From: Ascidiella aspersa
Taxonomy: Eukaryota
DNA: 64,000 nucleotides
Assembly: GCA_963924565.1 (NCBI GenBank)
Contig: OZ004608.1
Span: 7,440,001-7,504,000 of the forward strand
Direction of reading: 5' to 3'
Below the pieces are notes generated by a model, which was not told where the DNA came from, did not search any database, and saw only the letters and a program-made list of their open reading frames with translations. Shown here piece after piece: positions 4,626-30,074 of the stretch (its first letter is position 1; every line of letters begins with the position of its first letter). The translations under genes were made by a program, and so were the position numbers.

Positions 4626-7600
4626 ATGAAGGGCCTTGTTTTGGTAATAATGGTTATTTGTGTGAGAAGTGGTTACTCCGAAACCTGGCATGTTTTTGGT
4701 AAATACGAGTATCACATTTCAACAAGCATACGAAGCTTTGATGGAGCTCAGTCAGCTTGCAACGCATTGAATGCAAACCTGGCGAAAGTAAACACCAATG
4801 AGATTCAACAATTTTTGACGGACACAATTAACAGCTTATCAGGTGAGGTTTGTACTTATAATGGCAACACAACTGCATACTGACTGGATTTCATTTTCAG
4901 GTTCTGTTAATACACTTTTCATCGGTTTAAAGTGGAACGCGGCACAAAAGGAATACCAATGGGAGGATGGAACTATTTTGGATGTGGCTCAGTGGGGTGC
5001 AAATCAACCAAGCGGTACTTCACACAAATGTGTTGTGATGAACAACAACCTCGATTATTTTTGGGATAATGTGCCATGCGGAAATTGGAACCACTACATA
5101 TGTTCGAAAAAGTTAGGTGCGTTGTAAATATCCCTATATACAATTACAAAAAACATTATAAAATTAATTTACGACGTAAAAATGTATAGGTTTCAATAGA
5201 TATAATTATGGCCATTTTATGAATGTACCCATTTCGGCTGTAGATATAAATAACCAACTCTTATTTGAAACATCCCAAATATTAAAACCCAGCCTAGTGA
5301 CGTATAGCTAATTGACGTATAATATTCCACTCAAATACGCCTCGCCTTACTGAAAAAAAAAAATATATAAAATAAAACTTCGCTTGTTCTATGCAACAAC
5401 ATATTCACCATTAATGCAATAAAATCCATAATTAAAGGGACCACTACCACAACTGCTACCAAAGCGACGTTGCCATCTACATTATCAACCACAACGACAA
5501 CACCATCTAAATTAACAGGTGCTGTGACTGCAACAACAGGAATGCTCCCCAAACCGACAATTTCATCTACTACATCAAGAAATAGTTCAGATGAGGCAGT
5601 CGGTGAGATAAAATTGTTAACTGATAGGAATTGCAGGGTTTAAAAAGCATAACATAAAAAAATATTTCTTGCTTTAAGGTATCAACCCTACCAACGATAG
5701 TGACGACTTGGCAATAATTATACCTGCTGTCATCTGTGGAGTTGTATTTCTTTGCATCGTGGTTGCACTGGTAACTTATAAAGTGTAAGTGCTTTAGGTC
5801 GAACGAAATGCAGCAGGAGATTTAAAGCTAATATCATTTGTAAAATGTGTTTCAGGAAATACCACAAACCTCAAAATACGCTCACACCAACAGCCAACAA
5901 CCGTGCAGGTCAGTCTGTGAAAATATTTTATTGCTATTTTAACAACAGCTTGAACGACAAAAGGTTTGTTGGACTAATTTAACAAAAAAGACCTAATGAA
6001 AAAAAGTTTTTTTTACCAAGGCTTGATGTAGCTGTTCTATATATGGATATTCGTATGGGTCAATAGTTCGTTTTATGTTAAGTGTTATTGTGTATGCGGT
6101 TTACGTTAAATATACGCTAAACAAACAAAGAGTACTTTTTTAACTAAACTGAAATAAGATGTAAATAAATGTAGACATGTCACAATTGTTTTACATTTTT
6201 TTTTTAACCTTATCCTGTTTTGAATTTGTATCCTTTGGAAGATTTAAATGTCATTTTCTTTGCCAGTTGTTATTAGTATTGAAAACGGTTAAAAGGAAAT
6301 TTATTGACAAAGCGTTTACGCACACTTTAGAGCTTTGGTTAGCCGAAGAGCTCACTTTGGTATATGGGTAATTAATTTGAAAGTGTTTTATTACATTGAT
6401 GGATTACTGGAGAAAATCAATTATGAAAAATAAGAGCGAACGGCAACAAGACCGGTAACTGTTAACTTGTCAAGGCAAACTGCACAACTGCACTAAGCAG
6501 TATCAGGCTTACTTTTTTCTCAAAAGTAACCACGTAGTATAAAACTGCAGAACAGCACGTATACGCCGACATCGACGACGCACGCCACGCCCCCGAGAGC
6601 CCGAGCCACGCCTATTCCAGCATCGAAAACGCGAGCTTGCCGGCCGACAGCGCCCAAATCAGCAATGACGACTACTCCAGACTGAACAGGACGGGACTTC
6701 CCCAGTCGGGACCTTCCCACACCAACTTGGTTTACAACATGGACGTCAAGATGCAGCAGCTGAGCGTGGTCGAGTACAGTTCCATTGATAATGATGTGCC
6801 TGGTGCTCCGGGTTCAGTACAAAGGCGCAGGGCGAACGATGGCAATCTGTACTCGGTCGTGAGAAAAGGTGATATATTTGCTTTGTGTTTTGCTTTGTGT
6901 TTTGCTTTGTGTTTTGCTTTGTGTTTTGTTTAGTGATATGTTATATCAGCGGCTTGGATTTTTTTTGAAAAACAAGTCGTGGATTAATTTGTGTAAATAC
7001 AAGACGCGCCTGTCTATTTTTAAGCAGGTGCCGCGGTAATAAAAAGGATCGGTGTACATTAAAATTAAATTAATGTTAGACCACAGTAAAATTAGTTAAT
7101 TTGACAACCAAAATACATAATTATATAGTGCTTTGATCTTTAATATACTTGCTTCAAAGTAAGCCGGCGTTGGCTTTCTGTCGCACATAAATTAAAACTA
7201 GACGTTACATTAATGCGTTGTTATTTACATACCGTTTTGAAGAGTCCACTAAAATATGTTAAAACTGAAAGCTAGACAAATTCGTTGTTGCTTACATATT
7301 AGATTTTTGTTGTAAACACACATGTGTGTTCATTTTTCTTGCTTACATATTGTTCAAAAATCGCACCTAACCTTCAGCTCTTTAATTTCACCCTTAAAGA
7401 CGCGTTTATACTACGCCTGCGCTGAGCTAAACTGGGCGTGAAATTGCGGTATACTATCGCTGCGTAACAGACAAAGTAAAATCACTTTCACGCTTCGATG
7501 GCGGTCGATCAAAGCGTGAAAATCGCTCCAAAGCGTACCTTTTAGGTAGCTGCAAGGAGCTTTAGTTTAGCAAAGCGTCAAAAGCTCGAACAGTATAATT

Positions 7601-10862: not shown

Positions 10863-13496
10863 ATGGAAAGTTTGCGTATCTTGATGTTATGTAGTGTGAT
10901 GGGATGTGGTTACACTGTTACCTGGCATGCATTTGGTGATTACGAGTACTACATTTCACCAAGTAATATTACATTTCAACAAAACTTCAGTGGAGCTCAA
11001 TTAACTTGTAACGCAATGAACGCAAGCCTGGCGAAAGTAAACACCAACGATATTCAACAGTTTCTGAGCAAAACTATTACCAACACGCCAGGTAAAATAA
11101 ACTTCCTGTAAATCCTGTTATGTTATTTACAGTACATAAAACAAAATCTTGTCAATTTTTATAGGCTCTATACATGCACTTTACATCGGTTTAAAATGGA
11201 ATGAATCAAGAAATGAATACCACTGGCTTGATGGAGCAATATTGGATGTGTCTCATTGGGGAACAGGGCAACCAAGCCACAATGAGACATGTGTTGCCAT
11301 GGCAAATTATATCAGTTATTTGTGGGATGATGTTTCCTGTGAGGATTTGACGTCATACATTTGTTCAAAATACTCTGGTACTTGTTTGTACTCGTTTTAG
11401 TGGGTCTAAAAGAATAAATAGTTATGGTAAAAATATAAAAACTAAACAAATGTAAATGTAATAGTTGTATTACAGAAGAAACGATTTTACATTATTAGGT
11501 ATAAGCAATAAAGAAAATGAATCTTAAATGATATATAGATTTGTTTGTTTACTGGTTAGATATTTAGTCTAAAAAATAGGTTTAACGGGAAAGTATAGTA
11601 CCTCCCATTTGACACGATGTTGTATCAGTAGGCTTAAAAGTTGTGCTAATTATTATTAGCATATCATGTCTAGTTGAATAATCGAGTCTCCATCAACAGA
11701 AAGAACCACAACAGATATTGCAACAAGCGAAATGACACCTTCAGCTACACATGCTGAAACAACAGACGAGTTCAAAGCCACAACCCTTAATTCAGGTACA
11801 TAACCCAACAAGTCTACAACCTTTATTGCTAAACTCGTCTGAAATAACCGATATGGGTAACTACAATATTTTTGTCACGCTGTCACATTCCTAACTGACA
11901 CAAAACACAGTCGACGATCGTTCTTTATTACGTGACTTTTCGTTTTGGTTGTTAAGATGTTCTTTTAGTCTTACACTTCGCACGTTTATCGACTCTCAGA
12001 ACGAATGATACATTATTTCATTGAAATTTTTTTGAATGTAAGGTGGTATAGACGGCATATAATATATTTTTATATTTCCGAAAAAAATGATATCATTTGC
12101 TAAAACATGGTACAGAAGTCAAGTTTTTTGTCATCCAGCATAACAATGCTAAATATGTATTAACAGTACATTTAATGCAGGCAAAACAACAGCAACAGCA
12201 ACTATGGCAACACAATTAACAACAACATCAACAATTGCAAGTCCAGGTACATAGCTCGGGATTTCGTTTCGTAATTAAAAGTACAAAAACAAAGTTTGTT
12301 TGAAATAACTTTCTAGACTGCTTAGCGATTGTGTGCCGTTAAGAAATTTCCCCAAAATAATATAATTGATAACAAAAGATTAATAGTCCGTCTTATTTCA
12401 TGAACTAAGAAACCTTTAAAGCTTTAAATTAATTGATAACGTTAGATTAAAATGCATATGAAAATTATTGTTCTGATCAAACAAAGAACGTTCTTGTATT
12501 TAAAGTAGGATGCTGTTCATGTCACACTGATGATGAATTGAGTCTTACAACAATAATTCTGACCCACAAAAAAACTTTTACTTTACGTAGAATGCTGTTC
12601 ATGTGCTAATGATGACTTAAGTCTTACAACAATAATTTTGACTGCTGTTACTTCCGGAGTCGTATTTATTTGCATCGTTGAATCACTCGTCATTTGGAAA
12701 ATGTAAGTGGTTTCGAAATCGACATAAATTGTTAAAAGTTGGTTGACTTATAATGTTCATTCTAGGACACGTAACGGGAACGTAAATAATCTAGCACCTC
12801 CGAAAGTCGACTATACAGGTTTGGATTTTCTAAATTGGTTGTAAATATTCAATTAAGTTGCTGTATTTTAAAATAATCAAATACAGGTATTGTTACTGTT
12901 GTACTGAACTATCTCGTGGGATGTATCTTAATGTGTAGACATGTTGATGTTTGCGGCCGAAACACTTAAACTATGTCCAGCATAGTCACGAACAAGTTAA
13001 TTTGTGTTCACAGAAAATTCGTAGTCGCCTATGAAAATATATTGTGATATATATTTGCGCATTTCATTAATATATGTATAAGCATTTTTGTCTCGTCTTT
13101 TGTTAGCAGTTTATAAATTATTACCGCGAATATTTTAAGGATATATAAAGTTGTGTTACCGCTACGATTTTTGACGAATCTGTCTGTTTAGTGTTTTGAC
13201 AGATGTAAAAAGTGTCCAAAATGTGCTATGCACTGTGTTTTTTTGACTGTTCGGTAAACGTTGCGAACTTTGCCTTCTCTTAAAATTACAATGCTATACG
13301 TTAGAGTTGATGTGCACTTCTTGCAGAACGGCAGGTAAACTTTGACGTCGAACCAAAGCAAAACACAAACGTAAAACAACCAAACAAGCCACTACCGTTC
13401 GAAGAAGATGATTCAGGTTACCTTAAACCCCACTCGACTTATCCGCTTCAAAACCTGGAAGATGACCAAGGCTACATCGAGTTTTCCCCTTCTTAA
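10863..13496 (+). CDS. G2: type I CTLD-mucin-TM receptor, short-tail class (CCSC, TM Glu, DxGY motifs), about 312 aa
   Basis: Exons 10863-11091, 11165-11377, 11700-11795, 12181-12246, 12591-12702, 12766-12818, 13327-13496. CTLD QPS/WDD; TM exon ECCSCANDDLSLTTIILTAVTSGVVFICIVESLVIWKM; tail EEDDSGYLKP...EDDQGYIEFSPS*. Confidence 0.88.
12500..12645 (+). repeat. Two-copy tandem repeat (82-bp period) spanning the G2 TM-exon acceptor
   Basis: AG acceptors end at 12508 and 12590, each followed by (g/a)atgctgttcatgt...agtcttacaacaataatt. Confidence 0.9.
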
Positions 13497-16400
13497 CGGC
13501 AGCTAGATCGTGGATTCAAAGTTAAACGCACATGAACAAACACGAATCAACGTGAAAACGATTTGTCCAAAAACGAAATGTATACTTATCTAAATTTTCG
13601 ATTTCCTGACATGTATAATACTGCTGATTAACGTTATTGGGCATCTTATTATTGTTGATATTTCACAGCATAAGCAGTAAAATGTAGCGATGTTTCTTTA
13701 CTGCAAATAGCGACAATTTTACTACTTAATTAAACATAACGCGTTGGTTTAAAATGCTGATATAATCGTTTGTATTTTTGCAAGAATTTGTATGGTATTG
13801 TAATAACAATCAGTTGAAATGACTTGCAATATACAGTAGGTTTTATCCTGGAAACAAATCGCATAGTTGCCTCTACAAATTATACATACACAGGAGCCAC
13901 AAGACAAATCTATGATTGTACAATGTTTACTGTATAAGTGAAAGTAGATTTATTTTGACATCATATATAAATTGTTTTATCTTGTTTAGTTTTATGTAAA
14001 GTATGTTTAGCAGCGTTAATAATTAATTTACCACGAACAGTATAAAATTCCAGGATGTTTAAAAACCGATTCAGGTCAGAACATTCTTCAAGGTACAACT
14101 TTTCAACAATACATATCAAAAACTACTACAAAAGCGCAAAAACGTTAATTTGAACTTGAAATCAAATTTTAGTTTTGACCATATGATCGTTGGAAAAACA
14201 TTAAAGTTAGCAATTTCACCGCTTTACCAAAATCTTGTTAGAAAAAAATTACGGTTTGCTTTGCACTCATGCTTGTACACAATTCTACCACAGATTTAAA
14301 TTTGAGTATCCGGCCCGCGGCTTATTTCTGCTAAAATGCATATAAGCAAAAATAAGGGCAAGTTTCTAAACATTTGGTTGTACGGTATCTTAAACACTCT
14401 TTCCCGTAAAACTATATTTTTAGCCTGTCTTAAATCCTAAAATGGAAATTATTTTCAAGCTTCGCGCGAATTCCTTCTGTCTTTCTCGTAAGTGGACGCA
14501 ATTTTTTGGCATCTTTAGAGACAAAAACCGTCCTCTGCTTATGGTGAATTCCCTAACGAAAGTTTACAAACTTATCCCAATATTTATATACCTTTTGCGC
14601 TTCGGTCGAATGCATTCCGTCGTTAAATTTTGAACTAAATACCAGCCGTTTTGAAAACTCTGAAACATAGTTATTTACATGTTGCCAACCTAATTTACTT
14701 AATGAACCCGTTTTATACCGTCTTTGCAATATGGCCGTTGTACCGCAAGTGATACATCGGAAACTTAAAGCCTTAAAAGCCCCCCAAAAAAACATTGTAA
14801 GTTTTTGTGAGAAATTTTTACGTATTTTAATCTTAACTTTTAGGTCAAGGCGCCCCACGACTTGATAAATGCCAATATATCAACAAGATATGTAGTCTAC
14901 ATTTTTATCTGTGCTCAATGCGTCACGGTCCCCTTATAAATCTAAATTAAAGTTGGCATTTCAAAACAAATGTAGTCGAAATTGTTTCGCTCTTCGCGTG
15001 TAGTCCTCTTTAAATTAAGCTTAAATAGCATATTTTAGCACAACTACAAACGTAATAACAGGTTCGTTAGCTTATTTGTTTTAAGCCATCAGAGCATGAC
15101 GTCATATTGCATGTAATTGAGATCTTTTTTTTGACCTGGCCTGCCACAGCATTTTAAGTTTTTTGTGCGGCATAAATAATTGCCCACCCCTGCCCAAGAG
15201 CATTCCTTTCAGGCGGACTTTATTGCCTGTACGGATTTGCTAAATCAAACTTTGGATATAACTTTAACGCATACGCGATATATTTACAATAATGTAGATA
15301 CACGTAACCCTAGTAGGCACAATGCCGAAATGTCTAACGTCAGGGACATTGTATAGCTTTCATTATTATTGTGTATTTCGATGTATTTTTGAACGAATGA
15401 AAGTTTGCTATGACTTACAAGTTAACTATGGACTTCAATTGATTTCGTTTACAACTGACTTTGTGACTCATCTTTGAGATAAAACGACTTAACTTTTTAT
15501 TTAGTTTTCATCGAATATTTGTATGGTTAGATGTAGTCATTACTTGAAAGGCACTAAAGGCAGTTTTAGTATTTGCACCAAACCGTTTTGGTGATACTTA
15601 TTAAAAATCGATATTTTGATGTTTAAAAACGTTTCGGCTATACCTCATGCATTTTTACAATGATGATGGCATGGGGTATTGCCGAAACGTTTGTGTACAC
15701 CGAAATGTCGATTTGAACGAATATGAAGTTAACCGACTTTAAAAGTATAACGTTTTATTTGCATGACAGTGACTCTTCGATTTAATTTTCTAATTTTGGC
15801 AAATTATTGACTTGGAGCTACAAAAACAAAACAAATAGTCCCTTGCATATTGAGACAGAGCCGAGGAAAAGTGGAGAGTACTTGTACAACAACCTACTTT
15901 ATGATTGCGAGTTTATTTTAGGGTACACATCAACCCGCTAAATTAGTGTTATAGATATTAAATAATAAGGTAATTTTTATTTGACAAAAATAGTTTTATG
16001 TATAACATTTCGTTGTCAACTTTTGTATGTCGATTCATTAGAAACATTTTGTACACCCACACGGTCCGAATCCTCTACGTGAAATAATAGCCAAACAAGG
16101 ATACGACCCTTTAAATAGAAAATCTGCAATGCTATAATTAAGGTGTTATCAGTGTTCTACTTAACTACCTTCTCGAAAAACTACACCCGCTTGTTTGAGT
16201 TTTGGTCACAAGTTTACAGGCGAATATATAACAATGAGAAGAAGTGAAAGTGATTTAGAACGCAGAGTATGACTGTGGAACAAGGATAGTTTAAATAGCA
16301 ATAAAACATAAGTAAATAATCCATTGGAGAACGTACAGGCTTGGCAAAATTGTAGCAAATTTTCATGTGAGATGTTACAAAAAATAAAACACTAATTTAA

Positions 16401-16539
16401 CTGAAGAAGTCTTTTTCTTAAGGAGTTGTATCTAATTTATGGTAATGTAAGTAAGTACAAGCTTTAAATGTTTGCCTGAGCTTAATTATGCTACTTTGAG
16501 TTTCATGTGATATTTACCACAGTCTCTTAAGTCTTAGAA

Positions 16540-19500
16540 ATGGAAAGTTTGCGTATCTTGATGTTATGTAGTGTGATGGGAAGTGGTTGCACTGTTACCT
16601 GGCATGCATTTGGTGATTACGAGTACTACATTTCACCAAGTAATATTACATTTCAACAAAATTTCAGTGGAGCTCAATCAGCTTGTAACGCAATGAACGC
16701 AAGCCTGGCGAAAGTAAACGCCAACGATATTCAACAGTTTCTGAGCAAAACTATTACCAACACGTCAGGTAAAATAAACTTCCTGTAAATCCTATTATGT
16801 TATTTGCAGTACATAAAACAAAATCTAGTCAATTTTTATAGGCTCTATTCATGCACTTTACATCGGTTTAAAATGGAATGATTCAACAAATGAATACAAC
16901 TGGCTTGATGGAGCCATATTGGAGGTGTCTCATTGGGGACCAGGGCAACCTAGCCACAATGAGACATGTGTTGCAATGGCAAAGTATACCAGTTATTTGT
17001 GGGATGATGTTTCCTGTGAGGATTTGACGTCATACATTTGTTCAAAATACTCTGGTACATGTTTGTACTCGTTTTAGTGGGTTTAAAAAAAAAATAATTA
17101 TGGTAAAATTATAAAAAAACTATAAACAAATATAAATGCAATAGTTGTATTACAGAAGAAACGATTTTACATGATTAGGTATAAGCAATAAAGAAAATGA
17201 ATCTTAAATGATATATTTGTTTTTTTTTGTGTATACTGGTTAAAATTCTAGTCTAAAAAACAGGTTTAACGGGAAAGTATAGTGCCTCCCATTTGACACG
17301 ATGTTGTATCAGTAGGGTTAAAAGTTGTGCTAATTATTATTAACATATCATGTCTAGTTGAATAATCGAGTCTCCATCAACAGAAAGAACCACAACAGAT
17401 ATTGCAACAAGCGAAATGACACCTTCAGCTACACATGCTGAAACAACAGACGAGATCAAAGCCACAACCCTTAGTTCAGGTACATAACCCAACAAGTATA
17501 CCTCTATAATTTAACAAAGTTACAACCTTTATTGCTAAACTCGTCTGAAATAACCGATATGGGTAAGTAAATTATTTTTGTCACTCTGTGACATTCCTGA
17601 CTAACACAAAACACAGCAAACGATCGTTCTTTATTACGTGACTTTTCGTTTTGGTTGTTAAGATGTTCTTTTAGTCTTACATTTCGTACGTGTATACTCT
17701 CAGAACGAATGATACATTATTTCATTGACATTTTTTTAATGTAAGGTGGTATAGACGGCATATGATATATTTTTATATTTCCGAAAAAAATTATATCATT
17801 TGCTAATACATGGTATAGAAGTCAAGTGTTTTGTCATCCAGCATAACAATGCTAAATATGTATTAACAGTACATTTAATGCAGGCAAAACAACAGCAACA
17901 ACAATTCTGGCAACACAATTAACATCAACAATTTCAAGTCCAGGTACACAGCTCGGGATTTCGTGTTTTAATGTAAAGTACAAAAACAAAGAAAAAGTTT
18001 GTTAGAAATAACTTTCTAGACTGCTTAGCGATTGTGTGCCGTTTAGACATTTCCAAAAATAATTTACCCAATTGACAAGTAAGAAACCTATAATGCGTCA
18101 AATTAATTTATAACATTAGCTTAAAATGCACAACGAAATTATTGTTGCAACCTGTTCTAATCAAACGAAAAACGTTCTTGTAGTTAAAGTAGGGTGCTGT
18201 ACATGTGCTAATGATGATCTAAGTGTTACAACAATAACTCTGACCCATGAAAAAACTTTTACTGTACGTAGAATGATGTCCATGTGCTAATGATGACCTA
18301 AGTCTTACAACAATAATTCTGACCCATGAAAAAACTTTTACTGTACGTAGAATGCTGACCATGTGCTAATGATGACCTAAGTCTTACAACGATAATTCTG
18401 ACCCACGAAAAAACTTTTACTGTACGTAGAATGCTGTTTATGTGCAAATGATGGCCTAAGTCTTACAACAATAATTCTGACTGCTGTTATTTCCGGAGTC
18501 GTATTAATTTGCATCGTGGAATCGCTCGTCATTTGGAAAATGTAAGTGGTTCCGAAATCGCCATAAATTGTTAAAAGTTGGTTGATTTATAACGTTAATC
18601 ATTCCAGGACACGCAACGGAAACGTCAATACACTGGCACCTCTGAAAGTGGACTACACAGGTATGGATTTTTTTTTAATTTTATTGAATATATCCAATAG
18701 GGTTGTAGTATTTTAAAATAGCGTCAAATGCTGTTAATTGTTTCTTAGTTACACATATTGTAGTAATTTTACCACTGAAATTGTATTGTTGTACTAAAAT
18801 CTTTCGGTGATGTAGCTTTGTATTTGTAAGCATGCTCGTGTTTGCGGCCATTACACTTAAAATATGGCCAGCAAAATCACGAACAAGTTAATTTGTGTTC
18901 ACCAAAGATTCATAGGGCACAGTCGCCTATGAAAATGCATAGTGAATGAAAAAAATATGAGTCGTTATAGATGACGCGTTATTTTCTTTAGCTATTAACA
19001 AATGACCAAAATATATTGCTCCACACAAAAATAGAAAATATTGTTTCTGTCTTGGTCGGAACAAAATGTATTCCCTATTAAGACGAAACTGAAAACTTAT
19101 TGGCGATGAAAAGTTCATTTATAAATTCGATTGACATGCTTTTAACCAACGTTTCAGGCAACCTATTTAAGTCTCCTTGAGCAAAATGCTTAACAATTAC
19201 AAGAAGAGCTGTTTTTAATTAATATTATGTATAAGAGTGTTGACTTTTTTTGATAAGAATTTATTTAGTAGATTGTAACCGCGAATATTTTAAGTTAAGC
19301 TAACTGCCGCGATTTTTGACAAACGTGTTTTTTCAGTGATTCCACAAATGTGTTTTGCTATTATTGGGTTTTATCTTACCTAGAACTATTAACACTGATC
19401 TATATTAGGTGTAAAAAGAGTTCGATAGGTTTGACGTACTGTTGTACTGAGTATTTTTTAACCGTTGGCAATACGTTATGAAGTTTGCCTTCTTCTTAAT

Positions 19501-19712
19501 GACAGTGCTATAGGCTATAGAGTTGATTTTGATTTATTGCAGAACGCCAGGTGAACCTTGAAAATGAACCAAAGCAAAACACTAATGTGAAAAAACCAAA
19601 CAAGCCTCTACGGTTTGACGAAGACGAGTCAGGTTACCTTAAACCTAATTCGCACTTCCCCCTTCAACATCTGGAAGATGACCAAGGCTACATCGAGTTT
19701 TCCCCTTCTTAG
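16540..19712 (+). CDS. G3: recent duplicate of G2, short-tail-class CTLD receptor, about 310 aa
   Basis: Exons 16540-16768, 16842-17054, 17384-17479, 17884-17943, 18430-18541, 18608-18660, 19543-19712. TM exon ECCLCANDGLSLTTIILTAVISGVVLICIVESLVIWKM; tail DEDESGYLKP...EDDQGYIEFSPS*. Confidence 0.88.
18185..18482 (+). repeat. 79-bp tandem repeat (4 acceptor-bearing copies) spanning the G3 TM-exon acceptor
   Basis: AG acceptors end at 18192, 18271, 18350 and 18429, an exact 79-bp period. Confidence 0.92.
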
Positions 19713-21524
19713 AGGCAGCGGGATCATTGAATGAAAGTTAAACGCAGGAAAACACGAACACAACGTGAAAAAGATTTGTCCCAATTCCAAACATGTATAT
19801 TTATCTAATCGATTTTCAATTTCGTGACGTGTACTGATGGTTAGCGTTAAGAGGCATCTATTTTTTGTTGATATTTCATAACGTAAGTATAGTAAAATAT
19901 AGCGAGTTATCTCTAATTCAAATTGCAACATATTTCAATCCTCATTTAAACATAACGCGTCGTTTTTCAATACTTAAATAATCTGTTTTGTTTTCTAAAC
20001 TTTAGCGAAGTTGTATGGTATAATAATAAAAATCAGTTTAAATGACTTCACAATTGTTACTGAAACATAAATTTGACTATGTTCAAACTTTGCATTTTTA
20101 TAATTGTCTTTCCACAAATGCACCCACAAGAGCCTCGTACAAATATATGATTGTAACATGTTCATTATTTAAGTAAAAGTAGTTTTTTTGGCACCACATA
20201 TAAATTATTCATCTTGCTGTTTTTCGTTGAACGTATTGTGTAGTTCACCAGCGTTAATATACTAATCTATTAGCTTATGACTGTAAATACGCAAATGAGA
20301 TTTTCAATTCGCCCTACTCGTATAATCTCAAAACGCTGATTGTATAACATTCGCGCTTGTTGCTTTTAGAATTGCAAAATATGGAAAATATAATGTTTGA
20401 ATCGTTAAATGTTTGACGAAAGAGTACCGCGGTATCTGGGAAACATTGAACTGAAGTACTAGGTTTAGTGTAGAACACATACCACCGTATTTTACCAAGC
20501 AATATGAAGTCAATGACCGAGGTCGTTATAGTCTGAATTTAACGTATAAGGTATAAAGCTGGCCTTAATTGCGTAATTGTTTTGGTTTGTCGCTTAATGG
20601 CTTCCGACGTGTCGTTGAAAAGTATATTTAGTTTAAGCTTGTTCTCAGCAAACAGTATATCAGCTCCGGCTTTTTTTACTTAGCCATAAGTGAGGCATTA
20701 GTTACTTATTAGAGACCAAGGTAGACTGATATTAGTTTATTAAAATATTTTGAAAGTTTTAATAAAAACTAATTCAAAGGGTTGATTGTTTTAAAAATTT
20801 TGAATGCCGTAATCAAAAGCGAACATGAAAAAAAAATTCTAATGTTTATGTGAGATATAAGAACTTTTGTAAATGTTCTACTTATTTTGTACAACATATA
20901 TACTGCAGCCAGAGAATTAATGCCTATACCTTCAGTTTATTCCTTGTCAAATATGTTTAACGCTGTAAGTCTTACGACCGACTCTCCCAGCACGTTGACG
21001 TTGCGTGGCTCGATAACACACATTAGGTAAATATTATCGACCTCAGCCAAGAAGTTAAAGTTGTTTACCATGTCGTTCAGGAACTTTCAGTAGAACCCCG
21101 GAAATCGCAGAACACCAGAAGTCGACAGGGCGATCTAATGTCAGGTCAGCTCTCTATAGTGTGAATATTTAAAGACAGATATTTGAATTTTTAGGCTTAA
21201 ACTTGTACTGAAACATACATATTCTGTTATCAAAACCCCTTGGAGTGTACTGGACAACGATAATGGCACCCATATATAGCACACAAGATGCCCACGGCTT
21301 ACAGAAATCAATTTGTAGAAAACCAAATATAAGGCTATAGGGCGAGGTTGGAACTCACGTCCAACTTCCGGTCATACCGCGACCGTTCTATATTATTTTG
21401 TTTCAATTTCTCTCCAAAAATATCTTATGGACGGCTCTATATGCAGCGATATTTAGAGCAGCTCAATATATTCGTTATGAATTTTTTCTCTTTTATTGTG
21501 TATGCAGATAGTCAGGTCATCGAA

Positions 21525-22036
21525 ATGAACTATTTACTGTTAATGACGCTTTGCTGCTTGGTGGGAAACTGTTACTCAGCAACCTGGTATACTTTGGGTG
21601 ACTATGAATATCACATTTCACCGAGAAATATCAACTACCAAGAAAATTTTGACGGAGCTCTTTCTGCTTGCAACGCGATGAATGCAACCCTGGCCAAAGT
21701 TAACACCAATGAGATTCAACAGTTTTTAACTGAAAAAATAAACAGCTTACCATGTAAGTTTACCTCTAATCAGAAGACATTTAGAAGTATGCAACTAAAA
21801 AGTATTACTCTCTTTCAGTTGATCCAAGTTTTTCAGTGATGTTTTACATCGGTCTTCACAGGAGTACTGACGAATATAACTGGTTGGATGGGACGATGTT
21901 GGATGTGGCTCAGTGGGGAACTGGGCAACCAAGTAGTGATTACGAATGTGTTGTGATGGAAAGAAATCTCCGGTATTTGTGGGAAGATATACAATGCGAC
22001 ACTTGGACCTCTTATATATGTTCCAGACATGTTTAA
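21525..22036 (+). CDS. G4: secreted single-domain C-type lectin (signal peptide + CTLD only), about 148 aa
   Basis: Exons 21525-21753 and 21819-22036. The CTLD is complete (FYIGL, QPS, WED, 4 Cys) and ends YICSRHV* at TAA 22034-22036, where paralogs have a splice donor. Confidence 0.8.
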
Positions 22037-23845
22037 TGTTGTTGATTAACGTTTATAAGCATTTTATTACTGTCAATACTCACAAAATAACTATAGCTGA
22101 ATTGAGCGAGCTCAAATCTCTTCAGTGCAAAATTTAACGTAGTAGGTAATTCCTTAAATTTGTATCTTAGATTTTAAATGTGTCAGAACAACGCATTTTT
22201 TCGTTAATTTGGAATAATTTCTTTTGTAATTACTATTATAGTTCGCAATGTCCATGCTATTTAATTCCCTTTACATTTGTGCTCTGTCCAATGCGACAAG
22301 ATATCGTAAAAGGCTTAACCATCATTGCTTGTATTTTGCCAACGCATATAAATCATTTATTCTTGTTGCTATTTTCGTTGCATGTATATAGTTTTGCTGG
22401 GTAGAGTTAGTTTCTGAATTCACACGGCAGTCCAAATCGTTTACAAAGAAAATATAACAAAATGGTTTTACTGTAACAACCGGTTTAGTTTTAAATGTTC
22501 TTTAAGCTAGAAACGGTTAACTATAAAGAGTAAAAACTCGGTAATTGTCGTTAACATATGTTCGTTCCTTAAAATAGTAGTTTCAAAATGTAAGTTTAAC
22601 CAAACGTACTTGCCGATAACTTTTAAGCTTGTTTGTAATTTTGGTAATTTTTGTCGTTATGCATTTTCAAAAAACAAATTTTTGCGCACCATATGAATGC
22701 ATGCTATACGTCGGTCCGTACATGAACAAAAGTGGAAAGCACAGCGAAAGAGCAAAAACTTACAGTAATATTTCGATAAGGAAACTGTCATTCCGAGGTC
22801 ATAAGGTCTCAACTGTACCAGCATTAGTCTCCAACCACGACAATTGTGGTACGTCTCCGTGTTACGTGCTTAATTAGCACTACAAAATTTTCACCGGTTG
22901 CTAATTACACCGACTGTAAATTCTAACTAACATTTATCATTAATTTAGCGCCTTTGTTCTTAAATTTAGGACTAGGAATTAGGTTTTAGCATTTCGGGAC
23001 ATGTATATTTTTTTGTGCGCTCTGGTGTTCGCCGTTAATTGGACTCTACACATGCTTTTCCTGTCTCTAAACAACGCTGCAAATGTCACGATCATTTATC
23101 GCTTGTTTTCCGTCGCGGTTTAACTTCTCACGAAAAGGTCCGCCCAATGTTATCTTTCCACGAAACGGTCGCCCTGTAAGGCGGGCCTCGGGTTTCCGGG
23201 AGCTCGTCGGTTCCCAATGAAAAAACGGCGCCTCCCGAAAATATAGATATAGGTTAATATTTACAGGTTATGTTAAATGCAACATACAGTTCTCTTTTGT
23301 TTTTATCCTTTACTGCCTGTCATTAAAAGCAGGATGAATCAAATAGGTGTGTAAGGTTAGCGTGAAGCGGTGGATGCTTAATTGCGAGATGCGTAGATCG
23401 AATAAGGGGGTCAGCGCAACACAACACTCAATTATGTAGCACAACACAAAAAAGGCAAATTGTACGCTTCGCTAAGCGCGCGCCGACGCGGAACCATTTA
23501 CGCCACAAGCGGCTCTTTACTAGTGGTCCTAAATAGCAATTGTACTACGTGGATAAATACAAAATAAGCTTTGTAAAAGCTCCACGTTTTTACCATAAAA
23601 AACTGGAAACACACCGCTTAAACCTAAATTTATTGCTAGACAAATATGTTAAGGCCTACAGTTTTACGACCCGACACTCCCGGACAATAACTGGCTTCCC
23701 AGGCATACAATGGGTAAATATTGTTCAAAGTTCTAGCCAGGGAACTACAAGTAGTTCAGAAAGTAGTAAAACTGCTTTAAACTTAATGAGCAAATGAGAG
23801 GAAAACAATAACACCAAAAGACGTCCTGTGGAGATATTATTCCAG

Positions 23846-24026
23846 GTTGTGTCTGTAATGCGAATACTCAGGCTACAACTACAGATACAACTCGCCCGGA
23901 TTTACAACAAAAGCAACATCAATAACACATTTATCAACAACTTGTCCAACGACTGGATCTCAACACAAATAGCAATAATTACACTTTCACCTGTAATGAC
24001 TACAGAATCACAAACAACCAGTTCAG
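23846..24026 (+). pseudogene. Frameshifted relic mucin-stalk exon downstream of G4
   Basis: tccag acceptor and tcag|gtaaaa donor bound Thr/Ser-rich text spread over three frames (TQATTTDTT / FTTKATSITHLSTTCPTT / SPVMTTESQTTSS), with stops. Confidence 0.6.
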
Positions 24027-24273
24027 GTAAAATCAGTCTTGTTCCCTCAGTTCAAGGGTTATTGTACTGAGATCTGTAGATCCCCAGGGACACTTTAAGT
24101 AGTTTTAAGACGTAAGAAACCTAATAGAAATCTTAGTTATCATAACAAAAATAAAAATGTAATGTTTAATATTAAGACAATAGGGGAAATGGACAAATGC
24201 TTTTGTGCATTCTATATTTAAACAACAAGTCTCTTACTTTGGAGCATAATAGTTGGAGGTTGTAATAAGATGT

Positions 24274-24433
24274 AATAAGAATATCAAAGCCCATACAGAA
24301 GTAATTATCATCATTAACGTTTCTAATAACTCTTTATTCAATGAATAAAAAAAAAAACTTATTCAATGAATAAAGAGTTATTCGAAACGTTCAAGATAAT
24401 ACCTACTTCTGTATGGGCTTTGATATTCCTATT
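24274..24433. repeat. Near-perfect palindrome of about 160 bp
   Basis: Arms aatatcaaagcccatacagaagta...aacgtttctaataactctttattca / tgaataaagagttattcgaaacgtt...tacttctgtatgggctttgatatt around an A-run. Confidence 0.85.
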
Positions 24434-26273
24434 AAGTCTCTTACTGTTATTGGTTTATGACGGCAGCAATATATATTAATTTTATTTTGTCATCCGCTTT
24501 TCTTGAAAATAGAGGACAAATCCTCCTAGAAGAAAAATATGGTAGGCCTAATTTATGAGTACTTATCCAACCAGTCGTAATATGTATTGCCTTTTATACC
24601 GACTGATTTTCTTTGCGAAGTCCTATTCATCAGGATTACAACTCCTTAAATGGTTTTAAAGAAATTGCAAAGCCAATTTTTAAGGACGCGAACTCTAGTG
24701 GCAATATTGTAGTTTAAAAGCATTTTTAATTTTCTAGTAAAATCCTTGAAAGTATAGTTGGAGCTTTGTTGACTATAGCATATAGTGCATATTTCGTGTT
24801 ATCTAACGTTCAGTAACGATATTAAACAATCCACTAATCTGCGATGTTGAACAATTCTCAAAAAGTACCAAAACGAAAAAAATACCTATTCCAAGTTTTG
24901 TGTTCTTTGTTTTGGAAAGGAAGAAGATGTTATTTTTTTAGTGAGCAATGTTTTCTTAATTAGAGTTTTCATTTTCTTAGTATGATTTAAATAATAAATT
25001 GTATAACTATGGTTTTCTTAATCTGTAGATGTTGTATTTTTCGATTTTGTAACAGTTCGATTTATTCAAGAAAACCTAAATATATATATGTCACATAGGA
25101 TTTATTTTAGATATAGATTTACTTAACGTTCATCGCAAGCAATTTGAGAATTTCAAATGACTAAATTAAAAAAAAGTAGGACAGTGTACTAATATAAGAA
25201 ACCAGCAATGAACTGTAACATAGTCTTGTGAAAACGTCAAAATACCATTTAGTCAAAACGAAAGTCAACCTTTCGAGAAACAACAAACAAGAGATAAAAT
25301 TTATTGTACAACAAACACACATTCAGCCAACGCCCCACATCAATGATTAAGAAATGTTCACCGAAAATAGAAACAAATTGAAGAAATATGTAACACAAGG
25401 GGAAAATAAAAAGGGAAACTTGAAATGTATTTTCTAAATACGACAGACCTTTCTATTTAATATTTAGTGGGTTTGCAAAAAGCACCGTCTTTATGGAATA
25501 TTAATTGCCGTGTTGGTATTTGTAACGAACCCAGTATTAGGTATTACAAAAATGACAGCAAGCGAAAGTGAATTAGCAGGATATTGATTTTACTCACAAA
25601 AATAAAACATTAAATCAAGGTTATGATTTTTTTTAATACTTTTCAGCTTACGATAGCTGTAGATGCAAACAGCTAGGCTGCTCATATTTAATCTGTTGAA
25701 AATAATTTTCGTGTACCAGCTTTCTTAAACGAAGTTTTGACCATACAAATTACGATTTGTCAGTCTACAGTACACCGTCAAGAAAATGAATACCGTAAGA
25801 ATTTTGCGATATGCGCGGTAAGACGTGAACTATAGGCAGTAAAAGATTTTGGTTAACATTTATACAGCAAGAAAAGTATGCTATTATTCATTCAAAGCTA
25901 CCTTTTCAATTCTTCGAAATAGTTGTTGGTTTATATGCCCACATCAAAGACAGTTTGTTGCTGTTTGTAATGTTATGGACATTTCTTTCGTTTTCTTACA
26001 CGTGGCTAATATGTCAAATTTTCTTGGCTGGTTAAGGATAAGCGCAAAAAAGTTGTCTACGCAACCAATTTTATTCTAGGTAAACCGTCAGAACTACTAA
26101 ATTGTGTTAAATGGGCTGTGTTGAAAATGGTGTAAACGTGATTTCGATTCAACGCGTAAAATTAATAACAATTTAAAAAAAGATGTAATGTATGTGCAAA
26201 CTGCCAAAAAGATTTTCATGGTCAGATTTGTTTTGAATTTGATTGTGTACATCGTTTCTCTCTAGGTATAAAC

Positions 26274-29200
26274 ATGGAATGTATTTACTTAATACCTCTA
26301 TTTAGTTTGGTTGGAAGTGGTTACTGTAATACGTGGCACTCTTTTGAAAGCCACAAGTATTACATTTCAACAAAGGCACAAAACTTTGATGGAGCTCAGT
26401 CGGCTTGCAACGCTTTAAATGCCACCCTCGCAAAAGTTAACACCAACGAGATTCAACAGTTTCTGGCCAACACCACTAACAGCACTTCAGGTAAATATAT
26501 GTTTAAAAACATCATAGTTTTGCAAAGTATGGTTAATATTCGACCTGGTTATCTTTTAGATCTTTGGAGCGCATTCTACATCGGTTTAAAGGGGAACACA
26601 TCTACAAATCAATACCATTGGTTGGATGAAACTATGTTGAATGTGTCCCAGTGGGGATCAGGGCAGCCAAATCACAACCAGACATGTGTTGTGATGTCAA
26701 AGAAAATCAGTTATTTGTGGGATGATGTTTTCTGTAGCTTTATAAGCAACTTTATTTGTTCAAAACTGACCGGTATGCTTGTTAATCGTTTAGTTGTATT
26801 ATTCAGTTAATTTGAAATGTTTTTTTTAATAACGGTATATACAATTTTTTTAACGATAAATAGAGAAATTTGATACAAATATAAAAAATAAGAACTGTGT
26901 GGCAAATATGTACAATAAGTAGTATGAAAACATTTGCCAGGTCTGTTTGCTTAGTAACAATCCCAATAGAAAATTATACCAGGGATGCGCTATTTGACGC
27001 ATGGCCTACGTTAATCTCCGAAAAATCCTCACCAAAACAGAAAATCGCAATTTTTTATTGAAATTATCACGTTTGCAAAGTGCATGGAATAATTGCGAAA
27101 CGGTGTGGGCATGAATTGCAAACCTAGTTTCCTTTGCAATTTTCCCAACTATACGAAATATACAACGCTACTATCGTTTGTCCAACCAACACAGAACAAA
27201 CAACAACACCAACTGTGAAACACGAAACAACAACAATGATATCGACCAGTGGTTCAGGTTAGTGAACAAACGACTTTTAACTCAATCAACAATAAAACAG
27301 ATACAAACTAATTTCACTTTAAATTTAAAACATTCTTCCAAATGGAAATATATATATATATCAGGGTATTGGTGAGAAGTTAAAAAAGTAAACTTTCAGA
27401 AAGTAACATGTTGAAGTTTGCCAGTGCGACACATATGAGTAATGTAAATTTGTATTTTTACGATTCAATGGTAATTGCCTTCACCAATAAAATCATCTCA
27501 ATTTCTAAAGCAGGGGTTCTTAACCAGGAGTACGTGTACCCCTTGTTGGTACGAAGCACCAAAGCAGGGGTACGACATGCAGTGTGAAATTATGTGTTAT
27601 TTAGGCATATTTGGGAAGAATGCGTAATTTACGAAAAGCAACAACAAAAAGCCATTAGTGAATTTTCTGATTGTTCGTTTTAAATATTGTGGAACATGCA
27701 AGACTGCTTTTAATGCATACATTCAACACATATGTTCAAAATACATTGATTTTAATTCCTATTATTACAATTTTATACTCTTCCGTTGGCCATTAGACAG
27801 GGGTTACGAGAAAATTTCATAAAACCTTAAAGGGTACGAGCGCTAAAAGGTTAAGAAACCCTGATCTAAAACTTAAATTTTACCTTTTATTTTTCCAAAA
27901 AAACAACCGTCCTTCCACAATCACCGCGAAATATCACCGGAACAGAAATGCTTTCATCGATGGCCGCTTCTACGACTATTGGGACAACAATAACATCAGC
28001 ATCAAATCCTTTAACTACAGACGAAATAACACAGAGGCCAGGTAAAACCAGTGGACGTTGAATGAAGCGAAATTTTAAAGTGTGCCTGAGGGACATTATT
28101 GGTAAAAGGATTTTGTCCATTTACGATACAATTAACAAATGCACAATTCCACGATATTTATAGGCCAGTGCTTCGCAACCTTTTTTGGCTTGCGGCGTCC
28201 TACAGAAATAATTAATAGTTTGCGGCACCCTTGCTCGTAACGTTACAATTTCCGAGATTGAAACAACATATTAACTGTGCAACAAGGTTGATAGATTTTT
28301 TTACTTATTGGCACTTTTATCGTACACAAAAAATTGTATCAATAAGTTTATAAATAAAGCAAACATTGGAACCTATACAGAATTTAAAATATCTCTCATC
28401 ATATTTGAGCGTTAAAAATCGCACCCTTGTGCCGCGGCACCCCGGTTAAGAACCACTAAAATGGGCGTTTTTTTAACCCTAAAATACAGGTTGCTTTCTA
28501 AAATAAAACAATCATTTTTCCACAACCTATTACAGCAACAGTATCAGAAAAATCGTCATCCATGGCCGCGTCTACAACTATTGGAACAACTGTGACGTCA
28601 GCTATCAATTCTCTAACTACAAAAGAACAAACATCGAATCCAGGTAAACAGTGGTCCAGAGATATAAGTTTGAAATAACATATTTAGTACAATCGCAACA
28701 TGACAAACAATTGCTTTGAAGGCAACTAGTTTAAGGAAGTTTTACTATATGGTTGTAACAATAGTGTTTGTACCAGATTGCAGTTCTTGTAGCAAGCACA
28801 ACTACGGAATTCTGATCATTATTTTAGCCGTTATGAATTGCGGCATGGTATTGATTTGCATCATCGAAGCTCTTGTGATATGCAAAATGTAAGTGTAAAG
28901 GATACCTCAGTATTTGTAACATATCTACTGTAGTTGCAGTTTTAATTACTCTAGTCGACGAACTACTTATTTTTTAATAACTTTACTTTAATCTAGTATT
29001 GTAGGCAAAATGACTTAACCTACAGATGTAATTTACTTAGGCAAATTACTTATCAAAATCAAATTTTAACCCAGTAATTACATTGGGGCTTTATTTTATT
29101 TTTACAAGGTATTCCAATGGTATGATAGTGTACAAAACTGAATATGGGTTTTACATGATATATCACCTTAGAAAACAACAGAGAACAGCGGACCCTATTC

Positions 29201-30074
29201 CTACAGACAGAAACAACACCGAAAATAACAACAGAAACAACACCGAAAATAGCAATAGAAAAAACAGCAACGATGATAACAGAAACAACAGCAACGAAGA
29301 CAACAATAGCAACAACAGCAACAATGATAACAACAGCGACAGTAGCAACGATTACAACAACAGAGACAACAGCAACGTTAACAACATCTACACCAACCAA
29401 CCAAGTAATTTTTTCTGTTACTTCGTATAGGACTTTAAAACATCAGGTTAGAACTTTTATCAACATATTTCGTTCCAAACCATACATTGAACTTTTTTAA
29501 TTCTTTAATTAAAGTTAGCTTAATTTGACTACGGTACAAAACATTATTGATTTGTCTATTTCACGATCGAAAGAAAATGTGGTTTGAACCTGAAAATAAA
29601 GCCTTAAATATGTCACTGAATCTTTCAATGACCTTCACTCGGTTATAAACAGATCAAAACAATGACACACACATAATGAGAATTAGCTAAGTTATTTATT
29701 TAAAAAAAATACCAATCAATCATTCCATTAGTTTATAAATCTGGAGCGCCAAAACCTAGAAACAGGTTCGTTCCATTATTTACGTTCGTTAGCAGCTTGT
29801 TGCGCCATTTCTCACATTAGAGCAACAATGCTAAGATTGCAAAGGATTGTTTGTCGACATGTTGCTTAAGTTCTTCTTATGAGTTATTGTTGTACACTCT
29901 GCAGGTCAAAGCGCCTACTATAACCTGGAAATCAATTCTGGCGTCAAAGCGCAATATGAAAACCTAGACACAGATTTCGATGAAGGCGATGCAGGTTACA
30001 TGGAACCAAACCAAATCCTTTCCATTCAAAAGTTGAAACAAGATGGTCAGGTTTACGTTGAGTTTAACGCCTGA
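26274..30074 (+). CDS. G5: type I CTLD-mucin-TM receptor with TM Glu, Asn-rich linker and ITAM, about 370-403 aa
   Basis: Exons 26274-26490, 26560-26772, 27195-27257, 27946-28041 (weak acceptor), 28536-28643, 28777-28888, 29172-29404, 29905-30074. CTLD QPN/WDD; TM exon DCSSCSKHNYGILIIILAVMNCGMVLICIIEALVICK; last exon YYNL-EINSGVKAQ-YENL...DAGYMEP...QVYVEFNA*. Confidence 0.85.
27511..27863. mobile_element. hAT-type MITE in a G5 intron
   Basis: TIRs caggggttcttaacc / ggttaagaaaccctg; flanks ttctaaag / atctaaaa (degenerate 8-bp TSD). Confidence 0.75.
28166..28458. mobile_element. Degenerate hAT-type MITE in a G5 intron
   Basis: Termini cagtgcttcgcaacc / ggttaagaaccacta with subterminal gcggcaccc motifs. 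Confidence 0.55.

What the first reader, a model, noticed from the sequence alone, without database searches (positions are those of the whole stretch)
12591..30074. Short-tail class carries an adaptor-like module: extracellular Cys cluster + intramembrane Glu + acidic tyrosine motifs
Seen: G2, G3 and G5 share a 112-nt TM exon starting CCSC, CCLC or CSSC and containing a Glu (ICIVESLV, ICIIEALV). They also share a 170-nt last exon with DDSGYLKP/DESGYLKP/GDAGYMEP and DDQGYIEF/DGQVYVEF. None of the long-tail genes has any of the three features. Established: DAP12 combines a CxC dimerisation motif, an acidic TM residue and an ITAM, and Dectin-1/CLEC-2 signal through DEDGY hemITAMs. Inference: disulfide-linked activating lectins with the adaptor chemistry built in, possibly pairing with a partner that has a basic TM residue. 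This is the reverse of the usual vertebrate charge arrangement.
Basis: partly seen in the sequence, partly recalled or inferred. Interest (0 to 1): 0.82.

Follow-up and report, generated by a model that had tools for sequence, protein, structure and literature searches.

The report
Sea-squirt lectin receptors, cysteine-glutamate membrane exon
Three neighbouring sea-squirt genes for membrane C-type lectin receptors share an old variant membrane-spanning exon with a cysteine cluster and a glutamate. Their tyrosine-motif tail is the common tail of a large gene family, so the "built-in adaptor" idea is an analogy that remains untested.

Summary
The sequence observation holds. G2, G3 and G5 each have a 112-nt TM exon that opens with CCSC, CCLC or CSSC and carries one Glu. 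Each also has a 170-nt last exon with two acidic G-Y motifs. G2 and G3 give fully open seven-exon models of 312 and 310 aa: signal peptide, CTLD, Thr/Ser stalk, TM, about 75-aa tail.

The three features are not one module.
- The tail exon occurs in at least 27 verified further copies in this genome. These include two genes just upstream of the window.
- All of those copies have ordinary TM exons.
- The Cys/Glu exon is unique to these three genes.
- That exon is old (dS about 1.5-1.9 between G2/G3 and G5) and constrained. The tail is under strong purifying selection (dN/dS 0.08-0.17).

The motifs have P or F at +3. They therefore fail the hemITAM and ITAM consensus in G2 and G3. Only G5 has an ITAM-like pair (YYNL-x9-YENL).

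The Glu lies six residues before the cytoplasmic Lys, and 21 hydrophobic residues precede it. It may therefore sit at the membrane interface.

No basic-TM partner, ortholog or transcript evidence could be obtained.

My best reading is constitutively self-associating (disulfide and polar TM) variants of a family of lectin receptors with tyrosine-motif tails. Earlier reports of this scan described this family on other DNA of the same genome.

The parts
10863..13496 (+). G2, a complete seven-exon gene of 312 aa. Exons: 10863-11091, 11165-11377, 11700-11795, 12181-12246, 12591-12702, 12766-12818, 13327-13496.
   Evidence: Open spliced model with AG/GT borders. The CTLD is shown by Pfam on the homologous G3 and G5 exons and by tblastn.
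16540..19712 (+). G3, a complete seven-exon gene of 310 aa. Exons: 16540-16768, 16842-17054, 17384-17479, 17884-17943, 18430-18541, 18608-18660, 19543-19712.
   Evidence: Open spliced model. Pfam Lectin_C hits on exon 1 and exon 2.
26274..30074 (+). G5. Exons: 26274-26490, 26560-26772, 27195-27257, 27946-28041, 28536-28643, 28777-28888 (TM), one unverified small exon (candidate 29005-29027), 29905-30074.
   Evidence: Lectin_C E = 3e-13. Direct splicing from the TM exon to the last exon would stop after 6 codons, so an exon of length 3n+2 is required.
12591..12702 (+). G2 TM exon, 112 nt. Holds CCSC (12593-12604) and the Glu codon (12680-12682).
18430..18541 (+). G3 TM exon, 112 nt. Holds CCLC (18432-18443) and the Glu codon (18519-18521).
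28777..28888 (+). G5 TM exon, 112 nt. Holds CSSC (28779-28790), a mid-TM Asn (28836-28838) and the Glu codon (28866-28868).
12766..12818 (+). G2 53-nt juxtamembrane cytoplasmic exon (TRNGNVNNLAPPKVDYT). It restores the reading frame between the TM exon and the last exon.
18608..18660 (+). G3 53-nt juxtamembrane cytoplasmic exon.
13327..13496 (+). G2 last exon, 170 nt. Holds GYLKP (13416-13430) and GYIEF (13470-13484).
   Evidence: dN/dS is 0.08-0.17 against G3, U1 and U2.
19543..19712 (+). G3 last exon, 170 nt. Holds GYLKP (19632-19646) and GYIEF (19686-19700).
29905..30074 (+). G5 last exon, 170 nt. Holds the ITAM-like YYNL-x9-YENL (29916-29966), GYMEP (29994-30008) and VYVEF (30051-30065).
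   Evidence: This tail is a singleton in the genome.

Best explanation
G2, G3 and G5 are type I membrane C-type lectin receptors. Their layout is signal peptide, one CTLD, a Thr/Ser-rich (mucin-like) stalk, one TM helix and a tail of about 75 aa. They belong to a large sea-squirt tandem family in which head, TM and tail exons have been re-paired repeatedly.

Their last exon is the family's common 'double acidic G-Y' tail: [DE]-rich-G-Y-x-x-P-N, then 12-15 residues, then [DE]-rich-G-Y-[IV]-E-F. I infer that it is a phosphotyrosine docking module. Its C-terminal G-Y-x-x-F also fits a YxxPhi sorting signal.

What sets the three genes apart is a derived TM exon:
- It has two extra codons that give a juxtamembrane CxxC (plus a third Cys in G2 and G3).
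- Its hydrophobic run is three residues longer.
- It has a Val/Leu-to-Glu change six residues before the cytoplasmic Lys.

I infer that this exon makes these receptors constitutive self-associating dimers or oligomers. The extracellular Cys cluster would form disulfides. The Glu would form polar inter-helix contacts, helped by the mid-TM Asn in G5 and by Thr/Ser/Gly in G2 and G3. This is the way the Val-to-Glu change in the neu/ErbB2 TM helix acts. The tails would then be pre-clustered.

Shown: the anatomy, the uniqueness, the age and the constraint. Inferred: dimerisation, phosphorylation and signalling.
For: - The gene models are open, with canonical splice sites, and the CTLD is confirmed.
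- The type B TM exon (the Cys/Glu variant) is found only in G2, G3 and G5 genome-wide. This holds by protein search and by a DNA pattern for C-I-x-E-x-L-V-I.
- It is collinear with the 106-nt exons of G1, G6-G8, U1 and U2. Glu aligns to Val/Leu, and the hydrophobic run is 27 against 24 residues.
- The G5 exon is closest to the G2/G3 exons (59-63% nt against 49-51% to the others), which points to one origin.
- Synonymous sites are saturated (dS 1.5-1.9) while dN/dS is 0.23-0.24, and Cys1, Cys4 and Glu are retained.
- The tail exon shows dN/dS 0.08-0.17, with dS up to 0.79.
- Y, P, Y, E and F are invariant across 12 aligned family tails.
- At least 27 loci carry the double G-Y tail.
- Ascidians are reported to lack DAP12 and DAP10 but to have the ITAM/ITIM signalling proteins (PMC11507803). 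Receptors with built-in ITAMs are known in Halocynthia (PMC5465252).
Against:
- No ortholog from another species was found, so conservation rests on two paralogous lineages.
- At the exon's overall 44% identity, retaining three named residues has roughly a 0.09 chance, which is suggestive only.
- The CxxC could form an intrachain disulfide, as it does in CD3.
- The Glu may sit at the interface rather than in the membrane core.
- The dimer prediction gave no verdict.
- The tail motifs match no tested SH2 consensus.
Confidence: 0.42

Rival explanations
1. Multi-chain receptor. The Glu is buried in the bilayer and pairs with a Lys or Arg in the TM helix of a separate partner chain. The lectin chain supplies both the ligand-binding head and the signalling tail, as CD3, DAP12 and FcR-gamma supply signalling to basic-TM receptors.
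For: - A juxtamembrane CxxC, an acidic TM residue and a tyrosine tail together mirror CD3 and DAP12/DAP10 (established knowledge).
- By alignment the Glu lies inside the homologous hydrophobic segment of the paralogs.
- G5 has YYNL-x9-YENL.
- The Glu is retained across dS greater than 1.
Against: - No basic-TM candidate lies in the 104 kb around the genes.
- None of about 30 family TM exons read here has a Lys or Arg in its core.
- The best 19- and 21-residue spans end just before the Glu.
- G2 and G3 lack any ITAM or hemITAM by definition.
- The same tail works with neutral TM exons elsewhere in the family.
Confidence: 0.12
2. Endocytic lectins. The acidic clusters and the C-terminal G-Y-x-x-F are sorting signals (YxxPhi, AP-2 or lysosomal type, as in LAMP-2 GYEQF and in the tri-acidic-plus-tyrosine signals of DC-SIGN and DEC-205). 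They are not kinase-coupled motifs. The receptors would take bound glycans into endosomes. The Cys/Glu exon would only modulate oligomeric state.
For: - Y-[IV]-E-F lies 2-10 residues from the C-terminus and is preceded by Gly and an acidic run in every family tail.
- Many copies in the other array also carry N-P-V-F, an NPxF-type motif.
- P and F at +3 do not fit Syk-type SH2 preferences (established knowledge).
Against: - The first motif, G-Y-x-x-P-N, is equally invariant and is not a YxxPhi signal. YxxP is a classic SH2 target type (Crk, Abl, Vav; from established knowledge).
- G5 adds an ITAM-like pair.
- Sorting and signalling are not mutually exclusive.
Confidence: 0.25
3. There is no special function. 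The Cys cluster and the Glu are tolerated quirks of one exon lineage. The Glu would act as an interfacial stop-transfer residue after a TM helix shifted by three residues, and the cysteines would be paired within the chain.
For: - The three-residue N-terminal extension of the hydrophobic run gives a full 21-residue span before the Glu.
- There is only one evolutionary origin, so co-occurrence carries no statistical weight.
- CD3 CxxC is an intrachain disulfide (established knowledge).
Against: - The features are retained in both lineages across saturated synonymous divergence, with dN/dS about 0.24.
- No other family TM exon of about 30 has either feature.
Confidence: 0.2

Closest known systems
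CD3 epsilon/gamma/delta chains of the T-cell receptor complex
   Same: Type I chain with a folded ectodomain, a membrane-proximal CxxC, one acidic TM residue and a tyrosine-motif tail. G5 even has a YxxL-x9-YxxL pair.
   Different: The ectodomain is a CTLD on a mucin stalk, not an Ig domain. There is no sequence homology. The Glu is near the cytoplasmic end. G2 and G3 have no ITAM. No basic-TM partner is known. Tunicates lack TCR and CD3.
DAP12 (TYROBP) and DAP10 (HCST) adaptors
   Same: Juxtamembrane CxC/CxxC used for disulfide dimers, an acidic TM residue and a short tyrosine-motif tail.
   Different: The adaptors have almost no ectodomain and a mid-membrane Asp. Here there is a full lectin head and a Glu six residues from the inner boundary. 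Ascidian genomes are reported to lack DAP12/DAP10 homologs (PMC11507803), and no homology was found here.
Dectin-1 / CLEC-2 / DNGR-1 hemITAM C-type lectin receptors
   Same: CTLD receptors that signal without an adaptor, through an acidic run followed by G-Y.
   Different: Those are type II proteins with the motif [DE]3-x-Y-x-x-L near the N-terminus. Here the proteins are type I, the motif has two residues between the acidic run and the Tyr, +3 is P or F, and there are two motifs 16-19 residues apart.
Sea-squirt tandem C-type-lectin receptor family reported earlier in this scan (s1-790865, s1-790843)
   Same: Same genome and chromosome, same head-stalk-TM-tail plan, same double G-Y tail class, and re-pairing of heads and tails.
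   Different: Those copies have ordinary TM exons. The Cys-cluster plus Glu TM exon is new and confined to G2, G3 and G5.
Botryllus FcoR receptors and the Halocynthia ITAM-bearing haemocyte glycoprotein
   Same: Ascidian type I receptors with tyrosine motifs built into their own tails (PMC12582321, PMC5465252).
   Different: FcoR are Ig-superfamily proteins with ITIM, hemITAM and core YxxI/L/V motifs. No lectin head, Cys cluster or TM acid is reported for them.
neu/ErbB2 Val664Glu transmembrane mutation
   Same: A Val-to-Glu change inside a single-pass TM helix, relative to the paralogs. In ErbB2 it drives helix-helix dimerisation by hydrogen bonding.
   Different: This is only a mechanistic analogy. 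The protein family is different and the effect was not tested here.

Membership tests
C-type lectin-like domain proteins (Pfam PF00059) | Significant match to the Lectin_C profile, with the four core cysteines | tested here: met
   G5 open frame: E = 3.2e-13, 50.8 bits against a cut-off of 22.6. G3 exon 2: 25.7 bits. The core Cys pattern is visible in the models.
Ca-dependent sugar-binding CTLD (EPN/QPD plus WND) | E/Q-P-N/D tripeptide and a W-N-D motif | tested here: inconclusive
   G2 and G3 have QPS...WDD and G5 has QPN...WDD. U1 and U2 have EPN...WTD. These are partial matches, and binding was not tested.
ITAM | YxxL/I - x(6-12) - YxxL/I in the cytoplasmic tail | tested here: not met
   G2 and G3: the two conserved Tyr have P and F at +3 and lie 18 residues apart. 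Only G5 has YYNL-x9-YENL, which meets the broad consensus.
hemITAM | [E/D][E/D][E/D]-x-Y-x-x-L (definition as in PMC12582321) | tested here: not met
   The sequences are EEDDSGYLKP, DEDESGYLKP, DEGDAGYMEP, EDDQGYIEF and QDGQVYVEF. There are two residues between the acidic run and the Tyr, and +3 is P or F.
DAP12/DAP10-type adaptor | Minimal ectodomain | tested here: not met
   The ectodomain is about 200 aa or more: a CTLD plus a stalk.
DAP12/DAP10-type adaptor | Juxtamembrane cysteines on the extracellular side | tested here: met
   CCSC, CCLC or CSSC are the first full codons of the TM exon, 5-8 residues before the hydrophobic run. Disulfide formation was not tested.
DAP12/DAP10-type adaptor | Acidic residue buried in the TM helix and needed for partner assembly | tested here: inconclusive
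   The Glu aligns with Val/Leu inside the paralog TM. However, the lowest-energy 19- and 21-residue windows end just before it (the scale values were recalled from memory). No dedicated TM predictor was available.
DAP12/DAP10-type adaptor | Sequence homology to TYROBP/HCST | tested here: not met
   The tail profile found no relatives among 1.84 billion representative proteins. The literature reports no ascidian homologs (PMC11507803).
YxxPhi tyrosine-based sorting signal | Y-x-x-bulky hydrophobic residue in a cytoplasmic tail | tested here: met
   YIEF or YVEF is invariant near the C-terminus. This is a pattern match only; trafficking was not tested.

The most novel reading that the evidence does not exclude
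A tunicate, which lacks CD3, DAP12 and DAP10, has independently built a CD3-like signalling chain on a lectin head. The chain has a stalk CxxC, a buried TM Glu and a tyrosine or ITAM-like tail. It assembles through the Glu with an as yet unseen partner that has a basic TM residue. That would be a multi-chain immune-type receptor outside the vertebrates.
Probability: 0.12. Interest if true: 0.75.

Novelty: new variant of a known kind. Interest (0 to 1): 0.4.

Why it matters
Charged-TM assembly of receptor and signalling chains is a hallmark of vertebrate immune receptors, and ascidians are reported to lack the DAP12/DAP10 adaptors.

A lineage-specific lectin receptor that combines a juxtamembrane Cys cluster, a TM acid and tyrosine motifs in one chain would show how such architectures arise by exon-level tinkering. 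Here one TM exon variant has been dropped into a family whose heads and tails are freely re-paired.

It also offers a clean natural experiment. Paralogs with the same tail but a neutral TM (U1, U2), and paralogs with a similar head but a neutral TM (G1), sit next door.

If the features turn out to be structural quirks, the locus is still a clear example of mosaic evolution in an invertebrate receptor array.

Tried and rejected
- Tail profile: the 12 family tails searched against 1.84 billion representative proteins gave only three weak, irrelevant repeat proteins.
- Word search with the G5 CTLD open frame found no hit. It sees only proteins of 98-311 aa, so this says little.
- Complex prediction with two copies of the G5 TM exon gave no verdict (score 0.11 against a mark of 0.32). 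This is neither for nor against binding.
- A scan of 104 kb (window plus 40 kb upstream) for hydrophobic 21-mers with one central Lys or Arg found only antisense or mucin-repeat artefacts.
- A Pfam scan of the TM and tail exons found nothing.
- Literature searches for ascidian charged-TM or ITAM adaptors found no description of this family. Zucchetti et al. 2009 is not held.
- I first placed the stalk exon 3 acceptor at 17358/11674, which broke the frame. It was corrected to 17384/11700.
It was redone with coordinates only.
- Spliced (joined) protein models were built only inside local scripts, for frame and dN/dS checks.
- I rejected the idea that the orphan open frame at 1528-1686 shows a long-tail gene carrying the motif. 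It is unassigned and unique in the genome.
Full report
**What is there**

The window (G000:C2:7440001-7504000, a sea-squirt genome according to earlier notes of this scan) holds a head-to-tail array of C-type lectin genes on the + strand. CTLD exon pairs start at about 4626 (G1), 10863 (G2), 16540 (G3), 21525 (G4), 26274 (G5), 34410 (G6), 38397 (G7), 45252 (G8), 53164 and 56839. Pfam confirms Lectin_C.

I built spliced models from coordinates. G2 and G3 are fully open seven-exon genes of 312 and 310 aa: signal peptide, CTLD (two exons), two Thr/Ser-rich stalk exons, TM exon, a 53-nt exon and a 170-nt last exon. All have AG/GT borders. G5 has three stalk exons and the same TM and last exons.

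The joined models were used only in local scripts.

**Observation**

One addition is needed. The TM exon ends in phase 2 and the last exon begins in phase 1, so an exon of length 3n+2 must lie between them.
- In G2 and G3 it is a well-defined 53-nt exon (12766-12818 and 18608-18660). U1 and U2 have a 53-nt exon at the same place.
- In G5 the only candidate at the homologous position is a 23-nt micro-exon (29005-29027). Longer Asn-rich alternatives exist.
- Without this exon the G5 tail would stop after six codons. The G5 tail frame therefore rests on motif conservation, not on a verified junction.

**The TM exon**

The 112-nt exon is collinear with the 106-nt TM exon of G1, G6, G7, G8 and of two genes just upstream of the window (U1, U2). 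Relative to those, the G2/G3/G5 exon (type B) differs in three ways:
- It has two extra N-terminal codons that create C-x-x-C.
- Its hydrophobic run is 27 residues instead of 24.
- It has Glu (GAA in all three genes) where the others have Val or Leu, six residues before the cytoplasmic Lys.

G5's exon is nearest to the G2/G3 exons (59-63% nt against 49-51% to the others), so type B arose once.

Type B is unique in the 308-Mb genome. Protein searches with either version find only these three exons. A DNA pattern for C-I-x-E-x-L-V-I gives 12 hits, of which only these three are TM-like.

The split between G2/G3 and G5 is old. Synonymous sites are saturated (dS 1.5-1.9), with dN/dS 0.23-0.24. At the exon's 44% identity, keeping three named residues has a chance of roughly 0.09. 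That is suggestive, not proof.

**Is the Glu in the membrane?**

By homology it lies inside the segment that is uninterrupted hydrophobic TM in the paralogs. With an additive biological hydrophobicity scale (values recalled from memory), the best 19- and 21-residue windows in all three genes end exactly before the Glu. Windows that include it cost about 2 kcal/mol more.

The three-residue extension on the extracellular side gives a full 21-residue span ahead of the Glu. The Glu is either in the inner leaflet or at the interface.

**The tail**

The last exon is not specific to these genes. A genome search finds 44 matches. In at least 27 fetched loci I read the same double motif. In 12 aligned tails, Y, P, Y, E and F are invariant, and G, N, Q, E, D and G are nearly so.

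The TM segments upstream of those tails were found at 24 loci in the array at C2:5.87-6.35 Mb, plus U1 and U2. All are ordinary, with no acidic or basic core residue and no Cys cluster.

U1 and U2 combine three parts of different origin:
- an EPN-type head from a different CTLD clade;
- a TM exon 90% identical to G1's;
- a tail exon 77-79% identical to G3's.

G2 and G3 are themselves mosaics. Heads and introns 1-3 are 93-96% identical. Their tails differ at dS 0.65, and intron 6 is only 62% identical.

The three features are therefore separable exon-level characters in a family that re-pairs heads, TM exons and tails. They are not a co-inherited module.

The tail is clearly functional: dN/dS is 0.08-0.17 at dS 0.65-0.79.

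**Motif identity**

The motifs read [DE]-rich-S/A/N-G-Y-[LMV]-x-P-N and [DE]-rich-x-G-Y-[IV]-E-F, with the two Tyr 16-19 residues apart. They fail the hemITAM definition ([ED]3-x-Y-x-x-L, PMC12582321) and the ITAM definition.

Only G5 has an ITAM-like YYNL-x9-YENL upstream in the same exon. This agrees with note s1-801860. G5's tail is a singleton in the genome.

From established knowledge, YxxP is a Crk/Abl/Vav-type SH2 target (G5's YMEP equals the Vav optimum). G-Y-x-x-F near a C-terminus also fits YxxPhi sorting signals. Signalling and endocytic sorting both remain open.

**Partner, dimer, expression**
- No basic-TM candidate was found in 104 kb around the genes, nor among about 30 family TM exons.
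- A two-copy fold of the G5 TM exon gave no verdict.
- No relatives were found in the protein libraries.
- None of these absences is strong evidence.

**Context**

Ascidians are reported to lack DAP12, DAP10, LAT and SLP-76, but to have the ITAM/ITIM signalling proteins and receptors with built-in tyrosine motifs (PMC11507803, PMC12582321, PMC5465252).

The closest architectural analogue is CD3 (stalk CxxC, TM acid, ITAM) rather than DAP12. There is no homology to either.

The family itself was already described by this scan on other DNA of this genome (s1-790865, s1-790843). What is new here is the Cys/Glu TM exon.

**Verdict**

The most likely mechanism (0.42) is constitutive self-association of these three receptors through the Cys cluster and polar TM residues, which would pre-cluster a family-standard tyrosine tail. 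The rivals are:
- a CD3-like partner-dependent complex (0.12);
- endocytic sorting as the tail's main role (0.25; this concerns the tail's role and does not exclude the TM-exon readings);
- no special function (0.20).

Noticed in passing
window 18195-18481 (and one partial copy just upstream of 12591): A 79-nt tandem repeat of 3.6 copies at 92% match duplicates the TM-exon splice acceptor and the first ~52 nt of the exon, including the Cys cluster, in G3. G2 has one extra partial copy. Use of an upstream acceptor would run into a stop and give a truncated product without a TM segment.
   Followed up: partly
window 1528-1686: An orphan stop-free frame ends ...KEDDDGYIEFNPGESPAAPSANVYAGFKF*. It shows the family's second tail motif, lies between U2 and G1, is unique in the genome and is not assigned to any gene model.
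   Followed up: partly
window 38652-38861 and 53795-53995: CTLD exon 2 of G7 and of the copy at 53164-53995 each carry an in-frame stop. These are probably pseudogenes within the array.
   Followed up: no
window 10863-13496 versus 16540-19712: G2 and G3 are mosaics. Heads and introns 1-3 are 93-96% identical. The tail exons have dS 0.65 and intron 6 is only 62% identical. This indicates recent homogenisation of the 5' halves, or recombination between older paralogs.
   Followed up: yes
G000:C2:7425328-7427796 and 7433164-7436090 (L040, L042): U1 and U2 have EPN/WTD-type CTLD heads from a different clade, a TM exon 90% identical to G1's (U1 with a GC donor), a different 53-nt exon, and a tail exon 77-79% identical to G3's. 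This is clear exon-level re-pairing.
   Followed up: yes
window 22040-26270: G4 (head at 21525-22030) has Ser/Thr-rich open frames but no recognisable family TM or tail exon before G5. It may be secreted or truncated.
   Followed up: partly
window 6538-6930, 36793-37146, 41131-41376, 48802-49173: The long-tail genes G1, G6, G7 and G8 share a large tail exon with several YxxI/L/V motifs: HVYADID, then about 13 residues, then YS[ST]I; [DE]YS[RQH]LN; VEYSSI, which fits the ITIM consensus; and YSVV/YAVV.
   Followed up: no
window 29190-29400: An A/C-rich low-complexity stretch between the G5 TM exon and last exon is open in all three + frames (Asn-rich, Thr-rich or Gln-rich). It could be intronic, or it could be the missing G5 exon.
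   Followed up: partly
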